64,000 nt of DNA. Source: Schmidtea polychroa (Eukaryota). The position numbers and the translations under genes were made by a program. The notes below the pieces were generated by a model. It saw nothing but the letters and a program-made list of their open reading frames with translations, searched no databases and had not been told where the DNA came from. Positions 7,731-61,494 of this stretch are shown here, piece after piece. The stretch is taken from contig CM097887.1 of assembly GCA_044892525.1 (NCBI GenBank), positions 1,302,001 to 1,366,000 of the forward strand, given 5' to 3'. The stretch's first letter is position 1, and each line of letters opens with the position of its first letter.

Positions 7731-8735
7731 TAACCCTTAGAAGGCTAGTTCTCTTTCACTGGCACAAAATACGATGTTTAGATACTTAATGATTAGGTAT
7801 CACATAAGGAACCAAGTAACTTTAAACGCTTTTGGCTTGATTAGTTACGGGAGTGTTGGCCTTTAAAAGTTAGAATAATTTTATTTAAAACATAATCAAG
7901 ATTTAAATCCTTGTAACCTCTTCTCCACTTACTAAATATCTTACAAATTAATATATTTAGTCTCCAATTGCTTCATCTCTAGATTCGAGGCACCTTAAGT
8001 GCTATTAGAAAAAGATCTAAATTTATTCATAAGTTGTTTCAAAAATATATTATTAAAACAAAAACAATTTTCCAAAATAATATAGGTGGAGAATTTAGCT
8101 AAATATAAATAATACATTCCGATTAATGTCATTATACAATTTCAACATTTCACAAACATACGAATTCATAATAATATTTTTAAATACATATTACAACTAC
8201 TATTAATCTTATAGTTATTAGAAGTTGTGTTATGTAAATATTATGATAAAAACGAACTTTTAACTATATATAGTTACTGAAAAACAAACATTTAACACTG
8301 AAATGCCGTTCCAAATTTTAATGAAAAATTACTCATCAGTCCGATTCATAGATTACTCGGTATTCCAAACATAATCCAGTTGACTGCCAACAATTCACTA
8401 TCAGACCCACCCCGTCACTAAATGAAGTCAATTGGCTTGTTCAACAGTGCAACCTTATATTCAAAGTTAATTTACTCTCAAAAATCTTTAATCAACAATT
8501 TTTATTTAAATAAACAACATCTGCACGGTTGAATAAATCTGAGCTTCACGGATCAAAAATTCTACTGAACAAAGTGAAACTGTTAAAGTTCATCAACTGA
8601 AAAATTTTCTCAGTTTTATGGTTTTTATTATGTTTGGTCACGCACAATCGAAATGAAAGATTCCAGCCCACTCGATTTATGGGAGGTATAAAATGATCAC
8701 AAAATGATTACAGCATTCAATAACAAATATCAACC

Positions 8736-9189
8736 ATGAAATTGCTGATCCTGGTCGGTATCTTCGTGGCGTTGGCATTGGTTAATGTCGAATGCGTTAG
8801 CAAGTCAAAAAAAAGTAACCTATAAACTTGATAAAGATTTCCTAAACTTGCTTTTCATTTATTCAGATGTTGATTGCTTGTCGATGTTGGATAAGATTGA
8901 TAGGGAATGCGACAGGAAATATTTGATGCTCGACAGCAATTGTGACAGCCGTTACGCTTACTTGCACAAGGTTTGTGATATTAAATACGAGAAACTAAAA
9001 GGCCGATGCAAATTGAGGATGTCAATGCGTTGCATTCAAAAATATGGGAAGCTGGACAGGAAATGTCTGCGAGAATATGACAGAGTTGATAGCTTTTGTG
9101 ACCAAAGGTACAACGTATTGGATACTCATTGCGATGGCTTGTACAAGTTGCAGAAGAAATGTGAGGATAACAGTAAGGCGAAATTTTGA
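8736..9189 (+). CDS. Secreted cysteine-rich protein with 11-residue periodicity, 2 exons, ~133 aa
   Basis: ATG at 8736 encodes a signal-peptide-like MKLLILVGIFVALALVNVEC. A phase-1 intron 8815-8866 (GTAACC...TTATTCAG) joins in frame to VDCLSMLDK...; there are 10 Cys after the junction. Confidence 0.8.
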
Positions 9190-9421
9190 ATTGGTATAAT
9201 CTTATGATCTCAATTTCTAGGTAAATGAACTGTTGAATGTTTTTTATTCGTAATAGTTTTACCTTTCGCTGAGTTGAATAAATCCTTACTGTTATTTTTG
9301 TGTTTTATCATTTTTAATTACTCAATAATTAAAGAAAAAATTATTAAATTTTTATCTATTTGTGTGACCTTGACATTCATAAGTATTTTAATTTAATTGG
9401 ATTATGTTAATTATATATTTT

Positions 9422-9448
9422 AACTAGCTTTGTACCCGGCTTCGCCCA
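9422..9448 (+). mobile_element. Possible Helitron/Helentron-type terminus fragment
   Basis: AACTAGCTTTGTACCCGGCTTCGCCC resembles the common ACTAGC..ACCCG..CTTCGCCC helitron-like end; the other end was not found. Confidence 0.3.
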
Positions 9449-9622
9449 AATTTACATTTATTATAATAATTCATTTAAAATTATTTTTTTATTTTAGATA
9501 TTTTCACATAATCTCTGACACATGAGTTTATCTTCTAAATAAAACAATTTAAAACATTCAGAAAACACAAACCATCGAGATGTATAAACACTACTCAAAA
9601 TTCTACTTTTATATGTATTTAA

Positions 9623-39177: not shown

Positions 39178-42100
39178 ATGGCAAGCAGGTTTGTTATATT
39201 GGAATATATACTTCAATAAAATTTTTGTTTTCTGATTGTTAAGACTTGATAAATTATTTGAATTACTGGAAAGTAATCATCAAAACATTCGAAATGCTGC
39301 TGCTATTCAAATTGGACAAATATCTGCCAACAACCAAGTCAACATTTCAGCATTATTAACTAAAGTATGTTTTGAAAATGAATATTTTAAATAAATTTCG
39401 ACAATGAATTTTATCTAGTTACTACCTTATGCGAAACACAAGATTTGGGTAGTGAGAATTGCAGCTTCTGATGCTGTTAGACATATAGGAAATAATGCAA
39501 AATTATGGACTCCAGAAACGTTTGATTCCAAAGTAAATAATGTTCCTAATTTAATAAATTTGGAAAATTTGAATTTACATGAAATTCTAAAAATTGGAAC
39601 TCGATTATATAGTAAAGACTTAAAAGATTTAGACGAAACTAATGCTAATCAGAATAGTAAATTCAAATTTGTTTAGCATCGATGTTTACAATATCTATAT
39701 AGTTAATGGCGATGAACTTGCTCGGCATTTAGGATTTTTGATTCCAGATGAATGTGAAATAAAGAATTTAATAACTAGCAAAGATTGTGAATTGATTGAA
39801 TCAAAATCGGAAAATAAAGTAACTGCAGAAATTTTATTATTTTTGAGAACTCGATTTAGATGAGTGTTGAGTTAGCTGTTGAGAAATCTATGGAAAATTC
39901 ACCTAAAAAATCTATTAAGAGGCCTCACGAAGAGTAGAAATATAATTCGAAATTGACAGGAATTTATTGAATTGAATTATTCAGAATCAAGGACGTCAAT
40001 GAGCCAGGGATAAAAGTGAAATGTGTTGAGAAATGTGAAAATGAAAGCGACGGTAAAGGTAAAGTAAATGCTGAATGGCCATGGGTGGATTTCTGTGAGG
40101 AATTGTTGAAGAGCTTATGGGATGCCAAATGGGAGATCCGGCATGGTGCAGCAACGTGCCTACGGGAATTGATCCGATCACAAGGCTCAATAATGGTGCC
40201 GAAAAACATCAATATTTTATCGACTGGCGAGGTAAAATTTGGGGTGAAATATTGTGACTATTAATATTGATGAATGGGAATTTAGTTTGTCGCTTGCCAT
40301 GAACGGTTTAAGGAGGAAATTGTCGTTCGGTTACTGTGCACGTTAACACTGGATCAGTTGTCAGATTTCGTGTCGGATGAGGTATTGTTGATAATGAATG
40401 ACGCGGATGGGGTTATCGATTGAATTGTCGCATTGTAGATGGTCGCACCGGTCAGGGAGAGCTGCGCACAAGCACTTGGTGTCATCAGTGTTCACTTGTC
40501 AAGGCCATTGGTCGAGATTTTGGCCAATCAGCTACTGAGTTTGCTGAACCACAACGAGTGGCGGGTGAATCATGGAGCATTACTGGGATTGAAGTATTTG
40601 CTAGCGGCCCGCATGGTGAGTTGTCATTGTTTTGTCGGTTACAGTCACATAATGACGCCTATCGATTGGTTTGTGTAGGACTTGGTGGGGATACTGCTGC
40701 CGATTATTTATGATCCGATCAGCAGGCATTTGAAGGGCAATTGTGATGATGATGTGCGATGCGCTGCAGTAACCGCGCTGATGCCTCTGTTTGGTGAGTG
40801 CTCTAGAGATGCGGTTGCTATTGGCAACGAAGAATTGGACACGCTCAGGACCGATTTATGGGATGTGCTGGCTGTGCGCATTGACTGTACGACATCAGGC
40901 GCCACATGCGCAGTGTTACAGCTGCTAGAAAGGCTCTATGAGAGATGTGATAGCATCAAACAATCAGCTGAGCGGGTGAAAACATTGAATGGCTACATCA
41001 ATCGGTTACACTGGTGCTATTACAATTACAGCGATCTCGTGAGACTGGCAGCCGTGCGCACCTGTCGAGCAGTGCTGCAATCGATGGGCGCAGAAATAGG
41101 AAACATTCTCGAGCATGCAACAATTCTGCAGGTTTTATCTCAATTGGTGCAGCGCGTGCTCATTGATGACAATCGGGAGGTTGCTGGAGAGGCTCATTCT
41201 GTGTGGAATCAATTCATTGATACGCTCCCATCGCAACTGCTTGCTCGTGTCTCGCTGGAGCGCCTGGAGATCTGGATGTGCTGTGCAATGCAGCCTGCAC
41301 GCCTCAGTTACACTGCTGGTTCTATTCTCATGCCCGATAATGCTACAGCAGGGGGGACACTGGGGCTCGGTCATGATCATGGCGATGGCGATGGCGATGG
41401 CGATGAGGAGGGCGGCGGCGGCAAGCACCAGATATCAACCGAGTTCTACATTGGCGGCAGGGAATCATTCATTGCCGAGGGATCATCAACTGCCAGGGAG
41501 GATCTGGTATTGAGGGCCCGATTGGCTGCCTGCCAACTCCTGGCCAGATTGTGCCAGAGGTTCCTGTTCCATGAAGCGTGCACGAGGAACATTCTCATAT
41601 CGATTATCGCCCAGACCCACCTCAAGGACCGATTGGCTATCCAGCGATTTATTGCAGCGATGATCCTCGCCTATTGGGATCCGGATCATTTGCAGGCCAT
41701 GCGGAACCTAGAATATTGCTCCCTTGAGCCTCTACAGTCCCAGTTATTCACTGCACTAGAGGAACCGATATATTACCAGGAAATATTATCTCAATTCAAA
41801 CAAATGCATAAAGCGTGTCGCGATCTCATGCTCATCTATATCGATAGGGGAGTTGCGCTGCCCCAATCGATTGTGAGCGCTGTTGGACCGGGTGCAACGC
41901 CAGTGTCAATCGCTCTCAACATTCCACAGTGCCAGTCACTCATAGCCAGCAACATGTGCTCGCTATGCCCACCCGATGCCATGACAACGCTCTCGTGTGC
42001 CACCGCGGCGGTGGACACGTGTGCCCAGCAGCATGCCAGTCTATGCAGATTGGTGGATATAGCAGTTGGTCGAGCGCTCTTGCAATGGGGCTGGCTGCCG

Positions 42101-45100
42101 ACCCGATTGACCCCGCTAATCAAGCCCCTAATCAGTGCGGTACGCTCCGAGCCATGCGTGACGCTCCAGACCGAGGCATGCATCGCATTGGCTCAACTTG
42201 TTGTCGACCATAATTCTCAGGCTCGACTGATTGCTCCCATCACTAAATTGGTGAACAATCTCCTCCAATACCAATCGGATGCGATCGATTCGTTGGCAAC
42301 AGGCCAACCGCATGACGAGGAGCAGCATGAAATCGTGGCCCTCTACAAGACATCGCAATTGGGCAGGGAGGCATTCCCTCGCCAGGAGGACAACCCTACT
42401 GCTGTTGCCATTGACAATGAAGTTTCCATTAAGCTGCGTGGGTCCCGCATGGCGCTGGAGAAGATTTACAGTCGATTTGTTTGCTCATCCGATCCAGATT
42501 TAGGCCATTCATTCCTGATGGAGATAATTTATCACGGCCCCCTCAAGCTGCTGGTGCACCAGGATCAGAACCATCCCCATGACAACAACATCAACAACAA
42601 CAGAATCATAGTGGCGCTGCGTGCCATGTCCACCTGCCTGCCATTCATCAAGCCAGCATCAAATAGATTACATCCAACAATATCATTCACCAGTTACGCT
42701 CAATCAATATTCCACATGGGCCTCTCACACATTGATCCAATCATTCGCCATTGGAGCGCTCGAGTGCTTGCTATCCTCATCATGCCGCAATCACCAACTG
42801 ACAATATCGAATTGTCCTCCAAATTGATCGATATCATTCTCCTCGGGGAAGCATTGAAAGCCCTGGAAACTAGCAGCAATGAGAAACTTTGTTGCGGCGC
42901 CATCGAGCTCCTCTATCTCGTGTGTCACAGTGGCCTGTTGCCATACCGACTGGCTATTGCTGTGATCGTGCTGCCAGTGGTGCTGGTCTGTCTGAATGCT
43001 CCATTTGATCCAGTGCGTCGCGTTGCAACTCATGTGTTCTCTCTCCTGCTCACCTTGCTGCCCCTTGAGTCATCTGGAGCGGACCTATCAATATTGACCC
43101 CAGCTAGACTCCACCAACGCAAGCAGCATCTCACATTTCTCGACAACCTGCTAAATCCTAAGCTGATTGGTCCATATAATGCCCATCAGGCGGTTGTAAG
43201 CGCCAAGCTCCGCCAATACCAAGAGGAGGGCGTCAATTGGCTGGGCTTCCTCAATCGATACGGTCTCCATGGGGTGCTTGCTGATGACATGGGGCTCGGC
43301 AAGACGTTGCAAGCGATCTGTGTGATAGCAGGAGAGTACAGTAGAGCACCAAGCACTTGCCCTCCATCACTCATTGTTTGTCCACCAACTCTCACTAATC
43401 ATTGGCAGCAGGAATTCAAACAGTTCCTCACTAATGTCCCTGATTTCCAGACAATTATCTACACAGGAACCCCAATGTATCGGCAGTGCATTTACAGTGG
43501 TCTCTGGCGTCATCAAGTTGTTATCACATCGTATGACACGCTTCGTAGCGATATCAATTTGCTGGCTAGGCCCGCATTCTCTCACTGTGGCGGCGGTACC
43601 AATGCAGGTACCAATGCAGGTACCAACGGCAGCACCAATCAGGACCAATCAGTTGCATCGAGTGCTGTGTGGAACTATATCGTGCTCGATGAGGGACACC
43701 TCATCCGCAACTACAAGAGCAAGGTTGCCATAGCAACAAAGTCGCTATGTGCCCGGCACCGGCTGGTGCTCACCGGAACGCCGATACAGAACCGAGTCGG
43801 TGAGTTGTGGTCGCTATTTGATTTCCTGATGCCAGGGCTGCTGGGAACGCGCACAGAATTCAATCGGCGCTACGGACGGCTGCTAGAGCAAAACGGGTCG
43901 AATTGCGGCAGGAAAGTTGACAGTGAGGCTGGTACCGCTGCCCTTGAATTGTTGCATCGACAAGTGTTACCATTCATGTTGCGACGGGTTAAGGATGATG
44001 TGCTCCAGGAGTTACCAGCTAAGATAATGCAGGATTACATGTGTACAATGAGCCCATTACAATTGCGCCTCTATACTCATTGCATCCAATCACAGGCAAT
44101 CTCAGATTCCATTGGTCCAGATTTCACTGGCCTCATGGACGGCAGCAGCAGCGGATCAATCAATCAGCACCATCACGGGTTCCAGGCAATGCATTATTTG
44201 CGGCTGGTATGCAACCATCCAAGCTTGGGCCTGACCAGCAGTCACCCATTGCATCGCACCATCATGAGAGAGCTCGCTACCAACAATCAATCTATCGATG
44301 ATATCAATCTGTCTGGGAAACTCGTTGCTTTGAGGTAAGGATTTCTATTGGCTGTTGATCACTCGGTTGGGGGGGGCCGCATATATGTGTGTGTATATTG
44401 ATTGGCTACTGATCACTCGTTTGGGGGGGGGTAGCGCATATATATGTGTATATTGATTGGTTGTTGATCTATTGGTTGGGGGGGGGGCGCATATATGTGT
44501 GTGTATTGATTGGCTGCTGATCACTCGTTGGGGGGGGGCGCATATATATGTGTGTATATTGATTGGTTGTTGATCTATTGGTTGATTGCAGACAGCTGAT
44601 TCTTGATTGCGGCATCGGTGTCAGTGGCTATGGCAACGGTAACACCAACGGCAACGAGGAGGGTGAGGAAGGGGAGAATGACACAGTGAGTAGCGTTGTT
44701 GCTAGCAACCGGTTGCTGGTGTTCTGTCAATCCATCAAGATGATGGAGTTGGTGGAGAGAATGATTCGGTTGGTGGTCATTTATTTGATGATATATAAAT
44801 ATTATTGATTTGGTTCCTTGTCTACCCTATAGTAGCGATATGCCCAAGGCAACTCATCTGAGGCTGGATGGCTCGGTTCCTGTGAGGGACAGGCAACGGA
44901 TCGTGGACAAATTCAGCTCTGACGCGTCAATTGATATATTGCTATTGACAACGAGCATCGGTGGGCTCGGGCTCAACCTGACATCGGCAAACATTGTGAT
45001 ATTTGTTGAGCACGATTGGAACCCGATGCGTGACCTGCAGGCAATGGATCGTGCTCACCGTATCGGACAGAAACACACGGTCATTGTTTATCGATTGATC

Positions 45101-51709: not shown

Positions 51710-54700
51710 AAGCCCCCCCTTAAACGCAAGTCTGCCCCCCCCCCAAATAAAAAAACGGACATGAATAAAAAATTACATTCAATATGTTTGATAAAAGAAA
51801 AATTGCTATCGTGCACACATGCATTGACATGGGTGTGCATGAGTTGCACATGTAGAGGTTTATGTAGTGTGGACGGGGGTAGGATGTTCCATCTATCTGC
51901 CTCACTGGAAGAGACTGGCATATGAAGTCGGTGGCGTGGGTAGGGTGCGTGCTGTCTGTGTTTCCTGACTCACAGGCAGTAACAACGCATGGAGGCATGA
52001 TTGAGTGTCAGAGCACGGAGTGGGTGCATTGTGGTCTTTATACGATGGTAGAGAGATAGGCCAATGAGCAGAGTGACATGTTAATTGATCATATTTTGTA
52101 ACATTATTTTCATCGTATTAGAACATGTCGACACAAAAAAGTATCATGAATTTCTTCCAAGTCATTCCAAAGAATTCTGTGACTTCAGTCACTTCATCCA
52201 GTGATAGTATCTCTGCTACTATGTCCTCAACTTGTGCTAGTCCTTCATCTGTACCTGCTATTTCATGTATCCGTGACAGTGCAGTGATGTCCTCATCTTC
52301 TTGTGCACCTGCTAAGACTCTGTCATCTACTAAATGTGATCTGGGTGAAGAAATGCCACGCCAGCCAACTGATGTAAATTTCCCAAAGACTTCGTTTGGT
52401 TCAAGGGAACGCTCATTTTCGTCTGTGTGGTATAATGGAAGACCATATTTGGAGTACTCTATTGAGAAAGATGCAGTCTTCTGCTTTTGCTGTAGAAAAT
52501 TTTCATTGCCCGGCTCTGCTGGCGAAAGTGCTTTCAGAACAGGAGGATTCCGAAATTGGAAATCGGCTTTAGAAAAAGGAAAAGGTTTTCAAAAACATGA
52601 ATCTTCTGCTGGCCACATCCATGCCATGGAACGCTGGAAAGAGAAACAGCTGAGATGTGAAAAAGGTGAGGAAGTTTGCACTTTGATTAATGAAACACAG
52701 CTGAAGAACAACCGTTATTATGTCAACGAAATCGTTGACGTTGTAAAGTTTCTTGTGACAAATGAATTAGCCTTTCGTGGTGACAGTTTCAGTAGAGATG
52801 ATATTGATGAGGATGATAAGCTTCCGTGTGGTCTATTTTTACGTCTCTTCGAATACACTGTTAAGAAAAATCCTGAGCTGGCTCGAATCATTAAAACGAT
52901 TCCCAAAATTGCCACGTACACATCACCTCGAATTCAAAATGAAATTATCGCGTTAATGGCATCAATAGTGCAAGAGTCAATTGTTAAGAAGTGCAAGTCT
53001 GCGGATGTTGAATATTTTACTCTGAAGGTGGATGGTACCAAAGATCGAACAGGGACTGAGAATGTGTCGATTGCCATAAGGTTTGTCTCAGCAGGACAAC
53101 CTCAGGAGCACTTAATCTGCATTTCCCGAACAATTGCTCTCAATGCAGAGGCCTTCACAGATGTAATTTTGACAACCTTGAAAGAGGCTCAGTTGGATCC
53201 TAAAAATATAATTTCCCAATGCTATGATGGAGCCGCTGTTATGTCTGGACAGCATGGTGGGGTGCAGGCCTTGCTTCAGGAGCGTCTACAAAAAGAAATT
53301 CCGTATGTCCATTGCTTCAACCACAAGTTGCATTTGGTTGTTGTGTGTGCCGTTTCTGAGTGCCAAAAACTGCGGGACTTCTTCGACATATGCAGAAACT
53401 TATACACATTTTTGTCATATCCTAAGGTTGCGGCCATATATCAAGGCGATAAATTGACACGGCTCATGGAACATCGTTGGACAGGACACTTGCAGACGAC
53501 TCAGGCAATAACAACTAATTATGATACAATTGTGAATTTGCTTGAGATGTGTTCTAGTAGACATTCTCACTTTTCAATTGATATTCAATTGGAAGCTACT
53601 GGACTCTTGCATCGAGTCAATGAAGTGGAGTTTCAGTTCATTGCACACATGGTGCTCTCATTGCTGACTATCCTTGAAACAGCCAACAATAGCTTGCAGG
53701 GTCAAGCAATGGACCTTTCTTCAGCATGTGATGTTATGGATGCCGTCATAGAGCGCATTCGCAGCCTACGCAATGAAGAGGAATTCCAAGTTCTTTTTGG
53801 GAAATTCGAAGGTCAAATGGATATGGAACGGACACTAAAAAGAAGAAGAACTCAGATGAACTCAAAATTAGACAACTTCATTGTGTTCGGATCTGTGGGA
53901 CAGCCAGAACACCAGGCCTTGCCTATCAGATGCGCATATCGCCAGATGTATTACGAAGTCGTTGATAGGACTCTGCAGGAACTAACAAAACGCTTCGGTG
54001 TCACCAACAGAAGCCTTTATAAGTCTCTTGCATGTTTGAAGACTGATCACGCAAACTTTTTGAATATTGAGGATCTCAAGACTTTAGCGACACTGTGTGG
54101 CGTGGACCTAAGCGAAACCCAATATGAATTTGAAACTGCAAAGGTTTTCCTATTGAAGAGAGCCAGTACTGTGACAAACGTTCATCAGTTAGTGCAAGAA
54201 CTGTACTCATACCGAGATGCTTTTCCATCTGTCTATCGTCTTGCAGCTTCTGCACTGACAATCGGTGCTTCAACTGCCACATGTGAGGCGACTTTCAGTA
54301 CTTTATCTCGTGTCTTAACTCCCTTTCGTACGTCGATGAGCCATTCTCGTAAAGCCAACCTTGTATTGCTCTCATTTGAAAGTGACATCAGTAATAACAT
54401 CAAATCTGATGAGTTTCTTCGGCGGTTTCATGAAATGAAAAATCGTCGACTGCAGCTATTTTCAGTCATGTCGATATCTCACACACGTAATTTCTTTTTT
54501 CTGGATCTAGTTCCTGTGTAATTTCTATTGCACTCACCTTTAGTTTTCAAATCTGTGTGACTGTGTGTTCTGTCTTTGTATGTCCAATTGTCCGTCGTGC
54601 AAATACATACAGCTATTTGTTTTTTGTGTTTGTTCCTAAAAAATGTGCGAAAATCATTTCCTATATACTAGTATATGCAATAATGTAGCAAAATAATGCT

Positions 54701-56240: not shown

Positions 56241-59200
56241 TCATTTATCCTCACTGGCAACCCGGCGGATCTTCTCATAGCCCTCGGTGATTGGCTCATC
56301 CGGCAGCTTATGCAGGTCATCATTCCTGATAATTGTGTTGCCATCGAGATCAACTGACAGATTGGAGGCGCCGAATTCAGCACTGAGCGTGGCAGCAGAT
56401 GATTCGAATGGTTTAGCAGTGAGCAACTGGCTGGCTTGGTCCAGCTGCACAACATCTAACTGGCGCAGCAATGTTATCGCCTCCGTTAGATCAACATATA
56501 AATTGGCCGATGCATTCCTGAATGTTCCCTCGCAATTTGCAATGGCCCACTGACGCACCTGGGCCTCGAGTTCCCGCTGTGAGATGCCGCCGCCGCTGCC
56601 TGCATATTGATGATGTCAATGGCCAATCAATGATCAATATATATATATATATATGGTTGTGTGTGTGTGAGGCAGCGGGGGGGGGGCACAATCACTCATT
56701 TATAGTGAAAGATATCAATGCGATCATTTCATCCATGCAATTGCACACACACAGAGCATCCATGCAATTGCACACACACAGAGCATCCATGCAATTGCAC
56801 ACACACACAGAGCATCCATGCATTTGCACACACACACCGAGCATCCATGCAATTGCACACACACACCGAGCATCCATGCAATTGCACACACACACAGAGC
56901 ATCCATGCAATTGCACACACACACAGAGCATCCATGCAATTGCACGCACACACACACAGAGCATCCATGCAATTGCACACACACACACAGAGCATCCATG
57001 CAATTGCACACACACAGAGCATCCATGCAATTGCACGCACACACACACAGATCATCCATGCCATTGCACACACACACACAGAGCATCCATGCAATTGCAC
57101 ACACACACAGAGCATCCATGCAATTGCACACACACACCGAGCATCCATGCAATTGCACACACACACCGAGCATCCATGCAATTGCACACACACCGAGCAT
57201 CCATGCAATTGCACACACACAGAGTACCATGCAATTGCACACACACACAGATCATCCATGCAATTGCACACACACACCGAGCATCCATGCAATTGCACAC
57301 ACACCGAGCATCCATGCAATTGCACACACACAGAGTACCATGCAATTGCACACACACACAGATCATCCATGCAATTGCACACACACACCGAGCATCCATG
57401 CAATTGCACACACACCGAGCATCCATGCAATTGCACACACACAGAGCATCCATGCAATTGCACACACACACCGAGCATCCATGCAATTGCACACACACCG
57501 AGCATCCATGCAATTGCACACACACAGAGCATCCATGCAATTGCACACACACACAGATCATCCATGCAATTGCACACACACACCGAGCATCCATGCAATT
57601 GCACACACACAGAGCATCCATGCAATTGCACACACACAGAGCATCCATGCAATTGCACACACACAGAGCATCCATGCAATTGCACACACACCGAGCATCC
57701 ATGCAATTGCACACACACACCGAGCATCCATTTAATTGCACACACACCGAGCATCCATGCAATTGCACACACACAGAGTACCATGCAATTGCACACACAC
57801 AGAGCATCCATGCAATTGCACACACACAGAGCATCCATGCAATTGCACACACACACACACCGAGCATCCATGCAATTGCACACACACACAGAGCATCCAT
57901 GCAATTGCACACACACCGAGCATCCATGCAATTGCACACACACACAGAGCATCCATGCAATTGCACACACACAGAGCATCCATGCAATTGCACACACACA
58001 GAGCATCCATGCAATTGCACACACACACAGATCATCCATGCAATTGCACACACACACCGAGCATCCATGCAATTGCACACACACCGAGCATCCATGCAAT
58101 TGCACACACACAGAGCATCCATGCAATTGCACACACACACACAGATCATCCATGCAATTGCACACACACACCGAGCATCCATGCAATTGCACACACACAG
58201 AGTACCATGCAATTGCACACACACAGAGCATCCATGCAATTGCACACACACAGAGCATCCATGCAATTGCACACACACACACACCGAGCATCCATGCAAT
58301 TGCACACACACACAGAGCATCCATGCAATTGCACACACACCGAGCATCCATGCAATTGCACACACACACAGAGCATCCATGCAATTGCACACACACAGAG
58401 CATCCATGCAATTGCACACACACAGAGCATCCATGCAATTGCACACACACACAGATCATCCATGCAATTGCACACACACACCGAGCATCCATGCAATTGC
58501 ACACACACCGAGCATCCATGCAATTGCACACACACAGAGCATCCATGCAATTGCACACACACAGAGCATCCATGCAATTGCACACACACACCGAGCATCC
58601 ATGCAATTGCACACACAGAGCATCCATGCAATTGCACACACACAGATCATCCATGCAATTGCACACACACACCGAGCATCCATGCAATTGCACACACACA
58701 CCGAGCATCCATGCAATTGCACACACACAGAGCATCCATGCAATTGCACACACACAGAGCATCCATGCAATTGCACACACACACACCGAGCATCCATGCA
58801 ATTGCACACACACACAGATCATCCATGCAATTGCACACACACACAGAGCATCCATGCAATTGCACACACACAGAGCATCCATGCAATTGCACACACACAG
58901 AGCATCCATGCAATTGCACACACACAGAGCATCCATGCAATTGCACACACACAGATCATCCATGCCATTGCACACACACACAGAGCATCCATGCAATTGC
59001 ACACACACACCGAGCATCCATGCAATTGCACACACACACAGAGCATCCATGCAATTGCACACACACACAGAGCATCCATGCAATTGCACACACACACAGA
59101 GCATCCATGCAATTGCACACACACACAGAGCATCCATGCAATTGCACACACAGAGCATCCATGCAATTGCACACACACACAGAGCATCCATGCAATTGCA

Positions 59201-61494
59201 CACACACACAGAGCATCCATGCAATTGCACACACACACAGAGCATCCATGCAATTGCACACACACAGCATATTATCGATTAATTCCAATTCTCCTTGGAT
59301 TCACAGATAGAAATTATCCATCAGCTATGCCGGTTGCGCAGTGCCAGAAATATAATCAATAATGTAAATATTAATAATTGATCAGTAGTTACCACCAGGC
59401 TGAGCGAGGACGTGAACATATGCCAGCAGAGACTCCTTGAATATCTCATCTTGCACACGATCGGCTAGCACACTGATCACACCTCGATTATTGGCAATTA
59501 TCGATCGGTAATTCAGGTCTGATCGCCACTTCCAATAGCTTGTTTTCTTGCTCTGGATCTGCATGCGAATATCAATCAATCAATATCGAGATAATGATGG
59601 CAATCAATTATAGATTATACAATGCTCTTTCATTATTTTAGGTTCGGATGTCTCATGCTGCTATTGGCTAGCAATAAAAATACAACGCAAGTGCAACAAT
59701 TAAAGGGAGACAGAAAGGCAATGAGAAAGCAAGTGAAAGGCAATGAGAAAGCAACAGAAATGCAATGAGAAAGCAAGAGAAAGGCAATGAGAAAGCAACA
59801 GAAAGGCAATGAGAAAGCAACAGAAATTCAATCAGAAAGCAACAGAAATGCAATGAGAAAGCAACAGAAAATGCAATGAGAAAGCAACAGAAAATGCAAT
59901 GAGAGAGCATCAGAAATGCAATGAGAGAGCATCAGAAATGCAATGAGAAAGCAACAGAAATGCAATGAGAGAGCATCAGAAATGCAATGAGAGAGCATCA
60001 GAAATGCAATGAGAAAGCAACAGAAATGCAATGAGAAAGCAGCATGAATGCAATGAGAGAGCATCAGAAATGCAATGAGAGAGCATCAGAAATGCAATGA
60101 GAGAGCATCAGAAATGCAATGAGAAAGCAACAGAAATGCAATGAGAAAGCAGCATGAATGCAATGAGAGAGCATCAGAAATGCAATGAGAGAGCATCAGA
60201 AATGCAATGAGAAAGCAACAGAAATGCAATGAGAGAGCATCAGAAATGCAAATAGGAAATGAAACTAACAACATTCCAATGGAACAGGCCGACAGCTGCA
60301 GAGAGCATTGCCAATGATGTGGCTAGGTGATGAGTGGAATTGAGCAAGCCTGATTCCAGTGCTGGCATGGGCAGCACCGAGTGAACGAGCCAACCTGATG
60401 CAAGCAGGACACCAGTCCAGAATAGGATAGAGTTATCAGTGGCCGAGTGCTTCATCATGACCTGTGGGATCGTGTGGATCAGCTGGCCCTCACTCAGCTC
60501 CTTGAACATCTTCAGCTCGATCTTATTGGCGTTGTGTAGGCGGGTGGCCACGACAACCCTCCTGAATGAGAGGGAGGGGAGAGAGATAATGATGTGTGTG
60601 CGTGTGTGTGTCATATGCAATACTTGTATGTGTGCCCCACGCGGAACGGGTTGACCCTGCCGCCAAGCGCAGCCCGTATCCCTAGGCCCAGCCGCAACCC
60701 CAGCCCATCCAGCAGCCCCCGCATCCTCCCCGCAACCCGCACATCCTCCCTGCCAAGGATCCACACCTTCAGCAACTCATATTGAGCACCATCAACCCAG
60801 ACCTGCAATATAGAACCGCCAATCAATCACAATATCATCATCACCAATCAATCACCTGGAGCGTGTTGAATCCACCCTCGCAATGGAGCAATTTCCCGAG
60901 CTCGGTGCGATTCAATTCACTGAAGTTCCCCAGCTCCATCATCCTAGACAGTTTCTGTACCAGCCAGAACTCCTCATCGAGCACCTGCCGGCGAGCAAGA
61001 GCTTGCTTCACTCCTCCTGAAGCCACTTCAACATCAGGATTCAAATGCTCATAGCTTGCCTATCATTATCACACAAATATTCCCCATCAGTTCTTTGCCT
61101 CATTTCATCAATTAAGCTTTACTTGGACTTCTTTCAGGAAGAAATGATTGCGATTGTAAATGCATGCTTCAAGGTACTTGTTGAACTCCTCAAATACTGT
61201 CAAATTGCTCGAGCCGACCAAATCCGGATTCTGGGAGAGCTTCCTAATGACTGTGGAACGAGCTAAAGGGATAAACTGTTCCCTAGTAGAATGAATATAT
61301 TAATAGGCATTCCACACAAACTGACTGTCACACTTGATACGAGCAACATTATCTGACGGTGAAATTCTAATCACACCGAAATCCAGAGATTTAACTTTAT
61401 TGAAATTCGACGAACGCAATTGAATAAATTTTACTAAATCTGACAGTCGATTAGCTTTTGTCAACATTGCTGTGAGCTGTTTCAGTCGTTCCAT
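56241..61494 (-). CDS. TMEM143: Transmembrane protein 143 (DUF3754 family), 7 exons, ~505 aa
   Basis: Exons 61494-61334, 61282-61123, 61059-60856, 60802-60624, 60561-60273, 59558-59393 and 56599-56241 join in frame. The ordered motifs EQFIPLAR, YEHLNPD, GNFSEL, QYELLKVWILG, YKRVVVATR..LKMFKE, two hydrophobic helices and YRSIIANN...RVQDEIFKESLLAY match TMEM143 as recalled. Confidence 0.85.
56730..59265. repeat. ~2.5-kb intronic satellite, unit GAGCATCCATGCAATTG(CA)n, ~25-31 bp, roughly 95 units
   Basis: Directly visible; fills most of TMEM143 intron 6 (59392-56600). Confidence 0.97.
59700..60250. repeat. 22-bp intronic satellite (GAAATGCAATGAGA[A/G]AGCA[A/T]CA) x ~25
   Basis: Directly visible; inside TMEM143 intron 5. 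Confidence 0.95.

What the first reader, a model, noticed from the sequence alone, without database searches (positions are those of the whole stretch)
8736..9189. Unrecognised secreted protein with a symmetric CX10C ladder
The ORF track starts in the wrong place; the spliced model has a signal peptide. The 10 downstream cysteines are spaced 10-10-10-10-7-10-10-10-9, with a repeat consensus C-D-x-[KR]-Y-x-x-L-D-x-x. Eleven residues is three alpha-helical turns, so the Cys line up on one face. The short central spacer suggests a turn, giving an antiparallel helical hairpin stapled by five disulfides (C1-C10 ... C5-C6). I do not recognise the family. It is a candidate hyperstable secreted effector or structural protein.
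Basis: partly seen in the sequence, partly recalled or inferred. Interest (0 to 1): 0.72.

Follow-up and report, generated by a model that had tools for sequence, protein, structure and literature searches.

The report
Planarian PROG-family cystine-ladder hairpin protein
This is a real, transcribed gene of the flatworm Schmidtea polychroa for a small secreted protein whose ten evenly spaced cysteines most likely staple two long helices together like ladder rungs; it belongs to the planarian-only PROG family, widely used as skin-progenitor markers, whose function is unknown and whose architecture I found described nowhere.

Summary
The gene has a signal-peptide exon (8736-8814). Its 52-nt intron (8815-8866) is removed in transcript contigs of one study. 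The ten cysteines are spaced 10-10-10-10-7-10-10-10-9.

It moves the stop to 9226-9228, giving 130 aa ending ...EDNSK.

The genome is Schmidtea polychroa schPol2.

AlphaFold2 predicts a helical hairpin (pLDDT 96). I could not read coordinates, so disulfide geometry is untested. Ladder pairing is supported by about 80 paralogues:
- Mirror-image cysteines are kept or lost together (C2/C9, C4/C7, no exceptions in 19).
- Lost pairs are replaced mostly by Phe, Tyr or Leu.
- Rung number ranges from 3 to 6.
- Hydrophobic positions a/e/h form a hendecad core.

The family is not unknown. Published qPCR primers for S. mediterranea prog-1 (NB.21.11e) hit paralogues L007-L010 as a 115-bp amplicon. Those paralogues are 31% identical to this protein. 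[quoted passage not shown]

The papers I read mention only a signal peptide, coiled coil, internal repeats and conserved Cys/Asp. None describes the ladder. The scan already saw a 12-Cys paralogue on other DNA (s1-240866).

Function and expression site remain inferred.

The parts
8687..8693 (+). TATA-like box (TATAAAA), 43 nt upstream of the ATG
   Evidence: Read. All paralogues inspected carry TATAAA(T/A) at a similar distance from their ATG. Function is inferred.
8736..8814 (+). Exon 1, coding part. Signal peptide residues 1-20 (8736-8795), then VSKSKK and one base of the next codon.
   Evidence: Translation. Covered 8736-8814 by transcript contig X1 record 1. The n/h/c regions, with V at -3 and C at -1, were read by eye. 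The same exon design occurs in paralogues.
8815..8866 (+). Intron 1 (52 nt, GT..AG, phase 1)
   Evidence: Skipped in contigs of X1 and X3, present in DNA run X6 (table 5).
8867..9172 (+). Exon 2: the whole cystine-ladder domain
   Evidence: Translation. Contigs X1, X3 and X4 cover it (table 8).
8875..9006 (+). Predicted helix 1 (model residues 3-46) carrying C1-C4. C5 is model residue 47, the first residue of the turn.
   Evidence: AlphaFold2 model m7a715bfa09f2, pLDDT 96.1.
9007..9024 (+). Predicted turn (model residues 47-52, C5-KLRMS). The 7-residue C5-C6 spacer runs to 9030.
   Evidence: Loop length is 6-10 residues in paralogues.
9025..9168 (+). Predicted helix 2 (model residues 53-100) carrying C6-C10
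9173..9220 (+).
   Evidence: Skipped in contigs of X1 and X4, two studies. A similar GTAAG..AG at or just after the last Cys codon is seen by eye in L002-L005.
9221..9290 (+). Exon 3. It completes codon AGT (Ser), then AAA (Lys) and stop TGA at 9226-9228, followed by the 3' UTR with AATAAA at 9277-9282. The 3' end is approximate.
   Evidence: Contig pieces 9221-9285 (X1) and 9240-9292 (X4). Sequence read.

Best explanation
Window 8736-9228 (+) is a three-exon gene of the planarian Schmidtea polychroa. It encodes a 130-aa precursor made of a 20-residue signal peptide and a 110-residue basic mature protein (13.2 kDa, pI 9.1, 15% Lys).

The mature protein is a single domain of two roughly 45-residue helices folded back on each other. 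Each helix is built from 11-residue (hendecad) repeats with Cys at position a, Tyr at e and Leu at h. This makes a straight hydrophobic stripe. The five Cys of one helix face the five of the other and form a ladder of disulfides (C1-C10, C2-C9, C3-C8, C4-C7, C5-C6). The result would be a stiff rod about 6-7 nm long.

The gene is a diverged paralogue within the planarian-specific PROG family (prog-1/prog-2 relatives). By analogy with its studied relatives, it is probably made in post-mitotic cells of the epidermal lineage. It would be oxidised in the ER, stored in secretory granules (Hyman vesicles) and released at the body surface.

Shown: transcription, splicing, the Cys lattice, family membership and purifying selection. 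Predicted: the hairpin. Inferred from covariation: the disulfide pairing. Inferred from relatives only: cell type, storage organelle and surface role.
For: Gene and transcript:
- Both introns are removed in transcript contigs, and the unspliced form stands in a DNA run.

Organism:
- G000 has 1012 contigs and 781,270,316 bp, and C2 is 189,691,935 bp.
- Table 1 of PMC11410931 gives 1013 contigs, 781,290,622 bp and N50 189,691,935 for schPol2.

Fold:
- AlphaFold2 with 26 paralogues gives pLDDT 96.1, pTM 0.78, helices H3-46 and H53-100.
- The prog-1 orthologue L007 gives the same hairpin (H78-125, H131-177, pLDDT 95-98) after a disordered Lys/Asp/Ser-rich N-terminus.

Hendecad core:
- Over 274 repeat units, hydrophobic content is 0.96 at a, 0.82 at e and 0.92 at h, and 0.30 or less elsewhere.

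Ladder pairing:
- 292 of 310 Cys in 36 family sequences fall in mirror pairs about one centre.
- In the five-rung paralogues, once the misaligned L013 is excluded, C2/C9 are both present in 10 and both absent in 9, never one alone. C4/C7 are both present in 6 and both absent in 13, never one alone.
- Lost Cys are replaced mainly by Phe (23), Tyr (9) or Leu (7).
- Members with 3, 4, 5 and 6 rungs and one with four tandem hairpins all occur.
- Solved CHCH proteins show the same outer-outer and inner-inner pairing for CX9C-CX10C hairpins (PMC6743065).

Family:
- About 80 loci match the profile in this genome, with the same exon design.
- Published primers for Smed-NB.21.11e (prog-1; PMC4477255) hit L007, L008 and L009 with 3+1 mismatches. 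They are correctly oriented and give a 115-bp amplicon. Background best hits have 5-9 mismatches.
- L007 against this protein: 31% identity over 99 residues without gaps, E 2e-16.

Literature on PROG:
- PROG proteins are small, secreted and planarian-only (PMC4507787).
- They are Lys-rich with conserved Cys and Asp positions (PMC5750089).

Selection:
- dN/dS is 0.24 against the closest paralogue L002.
Against: - No coordinates were available, so S-S distances in the model were never measured.
- AlphaFold2 tends to build hairpins from any such repeat.
- The mirror co-loss may reflect as few as two evolutionary events. The tree joins the C4/C7-less groups, though weakly (84/70).
- Mirror symmetry is equally expected for an antiparallel disulfide-linked homodimer of extended helices.
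- The window gene is a singleton, not in an opposed pair.
- By eye, its promoter lacks the CATG..CATG sites seen upstream of the prog-1 orthologues. Its cell type may therefore differ from prog-1.
- No S. mediterranea orthologue of this particular gene was identified.
- The runs called 'RNA?' are a guess by the tool. Splicing itself is what shows them to be cDNA.
- Signal-peptide cleavage was judged by eye.
Confidence: 0.75

Rival explanations
1. The protein and family are the same, but the cysteines make intermolecular bonds. Extended helices would pair antiparallel as disulfide-linked dimers or polymers, forming a cross-linked granule or mucus matrix rather than a monomeric hairpin.
For: Mirror-symmetric Cys patterns are also what an antiparallel homodimer predicts. 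Several paralogues carry one extra, unpaired Cys (L007, L030, L036, L037, P0024, P0037) that could make interchain links. Secretory-granule cargo is often polymerised.
Against: AlphaFold2 places a confident turn at the short central spacer. Loops are short and often hold Gly or Pro. P0007 strings four complete 8-Cys units on Pro/Ala-rich linkers, which suggests each unit folds on its own.
Confidence: 0.12
2. It is a defensive or predatory toxin of the disulfide-stapled helical-hairpin type, like nemertean neurotoxin B-IV, rather than inert granule cargo.
For: B-IV is a secreted helical hairpin cross-linked by four disulfides and found in the epidermal mucus of another spiralian worm (PMC6410017). 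This protein is basic (pI 9.1). Cheng et al. recall old proposals that such epidermal granules repel predators.
Against: There is no sequence similarity to any solved chain (best E 0.16). It is twice the size of B-IV with different Cys spacing. The authors saw no observable defect after 3 months of soxP-3 RNAi, and no toxicity was tested. Activity is entirely untested. This rival concerns function, so it can coexist with the structural reading.
Confidence: 0.1
3. The cysteines, with the neighbouring conserved aspartates, bind metal ions instead of forming disulfides.
For: Asp is enriched next to the Cys position (b 27%, i 42%). The CHCH protein Coa6 binds Cu(I) through ladder cysteines.
Against: The protein has a signal peptide and would fold in the oxidising ER. 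Lost Cys pairs are replaced by aromatic or aliphatic residues, not by His, Asp or Glu. A protein disulfide isomerase is among the top transcripts of the cell fraction enriched for PROG genes (PMC4507787 supplement 2).
Confidence: 0.03

Closest known systems
PROG family of Schmidtea mediterranea (prog-1 = NB.21.11e, prog-2 = NB.32.1g, prog-1-x, prog-2-x; Eisenhoffer 2008, Zhu 2015, Cheng 2017/2018, Almazan 2018)
   Same: Both are planarian-only, small, secreted and Lys-rich, with conserved Cys and Asp positions, internal repeats and coiled-coil propensity. Both form a large, partly tandem gene family. This protein is homologous to the S. polychroa prog-1 orthologues (E 2e-16).
   Different: This gene is a distant paralogue (31% identity to the prog-1 orthologue). 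It has the full 10-Cys lattice and no disordered N-terminal extension. It stands alone, not in an opposed pair. Its expression site is unknown. The papers I read do not describe the CX10C lattice, the hairpin or the disulfide ladder.
CHCH fold / twin CX9C proteins, including the CX9C-CX10C proteins Coa6 and Cox6B (PMC6743065)
   Same: Both have an antiparallel helix-turn-helix stapled by disulfides in ladder order (outer with outer, inner with inner). Cys are spaced about three helical turns apart.
   Different: CHCH proteins have two rungs on short helices, sit in the mitochondrial intermembrane space and are oxidised by Mia40. Here there are five rungs (3-6 in the family) on 45-residue helices with strict 11-residue spacing, plus an ER signal peptide and secretion. 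No sequence similarity was found.
Nemertean neurotoxin B-IV (PDB 1VIB; Barnham 1997, reviewed in PMC6410017)
   Same: Both are secreted spiralian-worm proteins. B-IV is a solved helical hairpin cross-linked by four disulfides.
   Different: B-IV has 55 residues and irregular Cys spacing (from memory, not tested here). It has a known paralytic activity on crustacean nerve. There is no detectable homology.
Generic long alpha-helical hairpins (T7 gp14, phasin PhaP, PLC-beta C-terminal coiled coil, designed helical bundles)
   Same: These are the best structural matches to the model (VIA-align Z 11.0-11.6, TM up to 0.79).
   Different: They have no cysteines. Scores are within the range expected for any long helical pair, since Z under about 13 is uninformative for such folds.

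Membership tests
PROG family (planarian prog-1/prog-2 relatives) | Detectable sequence homology to prog-1 or prog-2 | tested here: met
   Published prog-1 (NB.21.11e) qPCR primers map to L007-L010 with 3-4 and 1 mismatches as a 115-bp amplicon in exon 2. L007 against the window protein gives 31% identity over 99 aa, ungapped, E 2e-16. One HMM recovers both. The prog-1 protein itself was not available, so orthology rests on the primers.
PROG family (planarian prog-1/prog-2 relatives) | N-terminal signal peptide and small size (average 179 aa) | tested here: met
   MKLLILVGIFVALALVNVEC has n, h and c regions, read by eye. No SignalP tool was available. The precursor is 130 aa.
PROG family (planarian prog-1/prog-2 relatives) | Lys-rich, with conserved Cys and Asp positions (PMC5750089) | tested here: met
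   The mature protein has 17 Lys of 110 (15.5%), against 14.6% reported for the family. Family profile: position a is Cys in 79% of units, b is Asp in 27%, i is Asp in 42%.
PROG family (planarian prog-1/prog-2 relatives) | No homologue outside planarians | tested here: inconclusive
   The profile search of 1.84 billion proteins found about ten convincing relatives. Four are 2015 UniParc entries, probably S. mediterranea. The others are unnamed Logan/ENA contigs whose species I could not resolve. The remaining hits are spurious 11-mer repeats or phage tape-measure proteins. Pfam gave nothing.
PROG family (planarian prog-1/prog-2 relatives) | Genes in tandem arrays or opposed pairs | tested here: not met
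   The window holds only this one member. The nearest paralogue lies 394 kb away. Paralogues do form arrays and opposed pairs (C4:60.74-60.94 Mb, C1:206.5 Mb, C3:5.28-5.42 Mb). This is a tendency of the family, not a requirement for each gene.
PROG family (planarian prog-1/prog-2 relatives) | Expression in early epidermal progenitors dependent on zfp-1/p53/soxP-3, with protein in Hyman vesicles | not testable with these tools
   Only transcription and splicing in whole-animal-type runs were shown. By eye, the promoter lacks the CATG..CATG sites seen at the prog-1 orthologues.
CHCH / twin CX9C fold | Helix-turn-helix with two CX9C (or CX10C) motifs, disulfides in ladder order, and Mia40-dependent import into the mitochondrial intermembrane space | tested here: not met
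   The hairpin and CX10C spacing are shared. However, the protein has an ER signal peptide, five rungs and no sequence match to any solved CHCH chain. It works like a CHCH staple but is not a member.
Nemertean B-neurotoxins | A peptide of about 55 residues with four disulfides and homology to B-II/B-IV | tested here: not met
   The profile search against all PDB sequences gave no hit better than E 0.16, and 1VIB was not listed. Size and Cys spacing differ.

The most novel reading that the evidence does not exclude
The PROG family is a modular 'cystine-ladder hendecad hairpin' fold. Strict 11-residue Cys spacing would let any number of rungs (3-6 observed, and tandem hairpins) be added or swapped for aromatic pairs. 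This would make it the first natural extended disulfide ladder on a straight two-helix coil. The acidic residues flanking each rung (Asp at b and i) might let the rods condense with Ca2+ in Hyman vesicles and disperse on release into fresh water. That would give the long-unexplained prog markers a physical role in forming the planarian surface coat.
Probability: 0.2. Interest if true: 0.75.

Novelty: new member of a known kind. Interest (0 to 1): 0.5.

Why it matters
prog-1 and prog-2 are among the most used markers in planarian stem-cell biology. Yet the papers read here recognise only a signal peptide, coiled coil, internal repeats and conserved Cys/Asp in their products. No function is known.

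A concrete architecture turns 'novel gene family' into testable biochemistry. That architecture is a rigid helical hairpin stapled by 3-6 disulfides on an 11-residue lattice. It suggests tests of disulfide mapping, stability, Ca2+ or surface binding, and antimicrobial or anti-predator assays. It also explains why ordinary homology tools see nothing.

For protein science, it would be a natural, length-tunable extension of the two-rung CHCH staple.

For this particular gene the result is more modest.

Tried and rejected
Searches that found nothing informative:
- Pfam on exon 2: nothing above threshold.
- Word-indexed protein search with the single sequence: nothing.
- The same search with a 36-row alignment: only P0015.
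- PDB sequence profile: best E 0.16.
- Foldseek against PDB and AFDB clusters, VIA-align wide, and the ESM Atlas by shape and by features: only generic helical hairpins or nothing.

Rejected readings:
- My first guess was an insect (gall-midge or dipteran) salivary effector, based on AT-richness, tiny introns and the signal-peptide exon. I rejected it when BTAF1 proved equidistant from all Metazoa and the assembly statistics matched schPol2.
- The large hits of the profile search are not relatives. P0008 is a phage tape-measure protein. P0004, P0010, P0017-23 and P0028 are translated 11-mer tandem repeats.

Steps that failed:
- No printed PROG protein sequence could be found. The supplements hold only transcript ids.
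- No prog-2 primers appear in the texts I read, so the prog-2 subgroup was not mapped.
- Model coordinates are not exposed, so disulfide geometry could not be measured.
- The family tree is too weakly resolved to count independent Cys-pair losses.
- The bacterial promoter/terminator scan is irrelevant here.

Full report
**1. What is in the sequence**

- An ATG at 8736 opens MKLLILVGIFVALALVNVEC-VSKSKK.
- A GT at 8815 and an AG at 8866 bound a 52-nt phase-1 intron.
- Exon 2, from 8867, continues N-VDCLSML...

The ten Cys after the signal peptide are separated by 10, 10, 10, 10, 7, 10, 10, 10 and 9 residues. Only 1 of 10^6 shuffles of the mature sequence reaches seven equal gaps. A TATAAAA lies at 8687-8693.

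**2. Is it transcribed and spliced?**

Yes. Contigs of runs X1 and X3 (one sample, study P1, 2017) join 8814 to 8867. A DNA run of 2024 (X6) holds the uninterrupted genomic form.

X1 and X4 (a second study, 2016) also remove 9173-9220 (48 nt, GTAAG..AG). Base 9172 then joins GT of exon 3 to give Ser, followed by Lys and TGA at 9226-9228. The product is 130 aa and ends ...KKCEDNSK, not ...SKAKF. The transcript ends near 9290, after AATAAA at 9277-9282.

A matching GTAAG..AG at or just after the last Cys codon is visible in paralogues L002-L005.

**3. Whose genome?**

My first impression was of an insect. It was wrong.
- The BTAF1 exon in the window is only 40-44% identical to every named metazoan and fungal homologue. 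It is 82% identical to one unnamed 2015 UniParc entry.
- The genome handle has 1012 contigs and 781,270,316 bp, and its second contig is 189,691,935 bp.
- Table 1 of Ivankovic et al. 2024 gives the Schmidtea polychroa assembly schPol2 as 1013 contigs, 781,290,622 bp and N50 189,691,935 (PMC11410931).

The window is therefore chromosome 3, 1.30-1.37 Mb, of this freshwater planarian.

**4. A large family with one design**

The exon-2 protein finds 72 places in its own genome. A profile of 26 paralogues finds 80 at E <= 0.001, a lower bound. They are concentrated in arrays at C4:60.74-60.94 Mb, C1:206.46-206.67 Mb and C3:5.28-5.42 Mb.

Most of the 19 paralogues modelled share the design. It is a signal-peptide exon usually ending in a Cys, a short phase-1 intron of roughly 45-70 nt in the better models, then one exon for the mature protein. 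The window holds only this one member. Its closest relative (L002, 75% identity) lies 394 kb away. dN/dS between the two is 0.24 (dS 0.64), so both are under purifying selection.

**5. The fold**

AlphaFold2 with the 26-row alignment gives two helices, residues 3-46 and 53-100 of the 101 modelled, at mean pLDDT 96.1 and pTM 0.78. Structure searches return only generic long helical hairpins at uninformative scores. Examples are T7 gp14, phasin and designed bundles.

Over 274 eleven-residue units from the family, hydrophobic residues occupy position a (0.96; Cys 79%), e (0.82; Tyr 42%) and h (0.92; Leu 43%). No other position exceeds 0.30. This 4-3-4 spacing is the hendecad core pattern. Eleven residues are about 3.06 turns of an alpha-helix. 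A Cys every 11 residues therefore drifts only about 20 degrees per repeat and can stay in the interface over many repeats. The CX9C spacing of CHCH proteins cannot do this. That last point is reasoning from helix geometry, not a tool result.

**6. The ladder**

I could not read model coordinates, so the pairing rests on comparative evidence.

(a) In 36 family sequences, 292 of 310 Cys fall into pairs that mirror each other about a single centre. Most of the rest are signal-peptide Cys, partners that I had trimmed off, or single extras.

(b) The five-rung paralogues give the following counts once L013 is set aside. MAFFT misaligns L013, but it obeys the mirror rule when counted by hand.

| Pair | Both present | Both absent | One alone |
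|---|---|---|---|
| C2/C9 | 10 | 9 | 0 |
| C4/C7 | 6 | 13 | 0 |

This yields the patterns 10-10-21-[7 to 10]-21-10-9 and 21-21-10-21-21.

(c) Where a rung is lost, the two sites are taken mostly by Phe, Tyr or Leu. That is what one expects of residues that touch in a core.

(d) Rung number varies while symmetry is kept. There are 6+6 (L011, L012), 5+5, 4+4 (L038, L035) and 3+3 versions. One relative (P0007) carries four complete 4+4 units in tandem.

(e) Crystal structures of CX9C-CX10C proteins show this outer-outer and inner-inner pairing in a helical hairpin (Coa6 Cys58-Cys90 and Cys68-Cys79; PMC6743065).

Caveats: the tree does not resolve how many independent losses there were, possibly only two. 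An antiparallel disulfide-linked dimer of extended helices would give the same symmetry.

**7. Which family?**

Pfam, the PDB sequences and the word-indexed protein search are silent. The exhaustive profile search gives about ten convincing relatives among 82 hits. Four are 2015 UniParc entries, most simply explained as S. mediterranea gene models. The remainder are translated 11-mer repeats and phage tape-measure proteins.

A note from this scan on another piece of the genome (s1-240866) had read a 12-Cys paralogue the same way. It guessed the PROG family. I tested that guess.
- The qPCR primers printed for Smed-NB.21.11e (prog-1) in PMC4477255 match L007, L008 and L009 with 3 and 1 mismatches, and L010 with 4 and 1.
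- They lie in the right orientation, 115 bp apart, inside exon 2.
- The best chance matches in 40 loci and the window have 5-9 mismatches.

L007-L010 are thus the S. polychroa prog-1 orthologues. They align with the window protein without gaps at 31% identity (E 2e-16). They also fold into the same hairpin behind a disordered N-terminus.

The literature fits.
- The PROG family has at least 24 members of about 179 aa, with only a signal peptide recognised and no relatives outside planarians (PMC4507787).
- Members are Lys-rich with conserved Cys and Asp (PMC5750089).
- They are tandemly arrayed in opposed pairs, with 'coiled-coil and internal repeats'.
- PROG-2-5 is a 16.8 kDa precursor and 13.6 kDa mature protein in 'Hyman vesicles' of the epidermis.
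- The authors saw no observable defect after three months of soxP-3 RNAi (10.1101/179986).
- A protein disulfide isomerase is among the top transcripts of the X2 cell fraction that is enriched for PROG genes.

None of these papers mentions the CX10C lattice or a disulfide-stapled hairpin. 'Hyman vesicle' occurs in only one paper of the library.

**8. How it most likely works**

Shown: a spliced mRNA, a conserved open frame under purifying selection, the lattice and membership of the PROG family.

Predicted with support: a monomeric hairpin rod of about 6-7 nm held by five disulfides.

Inferred from relatives only: synthesis in post-mitotic epidermal-lineage cells, oxidation in the ER, storage in secretory granules and release at the surface.

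The surface role is open. It could be structural coat, defence or antimicrobial. This gene is a singleton. By eye, it also lacks the p53/p63-like CATG..CATG sites seen at the prog-1 orthologues. With L002 and L003 it shares instead an ATCGAAA(T/A) element upstream of the TATA box. It may therefore be expressed elsewhere.

**9. Verdict**

The structural reading is well supported but not proven. The 'unknown family' is the known PROG family, of which this is a new, divergent member. The scan had already met the same architecture in a paralogue on other DNA.

Noticed in passing
window 9430-9489: A very high-copy repeat lies just 3' of the gene, with word depth up to about 22,000 in DNA run X6 and many contigs ending there. 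It is probably the end of a MITE/SINE-like element.
   Followed up: no
window 56730-59267: A satellite array with a 27-29 bp unit (CATCCATGCAATTGCACACACACAGAG) repeated about 90 times. It explains the long ORFs open in several frames on both strands there.
   Followed up: partly
window 40682-44338 (+): A large BTAF1/Mot1 exon (SNF2 and DUF3535 domains). Its helicase part is only 40-44% identical to named homologues from any phylum, which illustrates the long planarian branch.
   Followed up: partly
window 52125-54521 (+): An intact 798-aa ORF with DUF4371 and a hAT dimerisation domain, probably a hAT transposase.
   Followed up: no
G000:C1:171545508-171545777 (not fetched): A 3178-aa open frame in the same genome matches the ladder profile at E 1.6e-7. 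It may be a giant protein with hendecad repeats or a chance periodic match.
   Followed up: no
L007 and L013, 110 nt upstream of the ATG; window 8640-8735: The prog-1 orthologues and their opposed partner genes carry CATG..CATG p53/p63-like half sites upstream of the TATA box, in line with the TP63-like motif reported for prog-1. The window gene, L002 and L003 share ATCGAAA(T/A) instead.
   Followed up: partly
L007-L010, L030, L036, L037; P0024, P0037: Several paralogues carry exactly one extra Cys outside the mirror lattice, for example CDC in the prog-1 orthologues. These might make interchain links. Another scan note (s1-254519) speaks of 'complementary odd cysteines' in an array.
   Followed up: no
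L042 (ENA contig, phage): The ladder profile picks up phage tape-measure proteins and apolipoprotein-like 11-mer repeats. These are hits by periodicity alone, a trap for profile searches with this family.
   Followed up: yes
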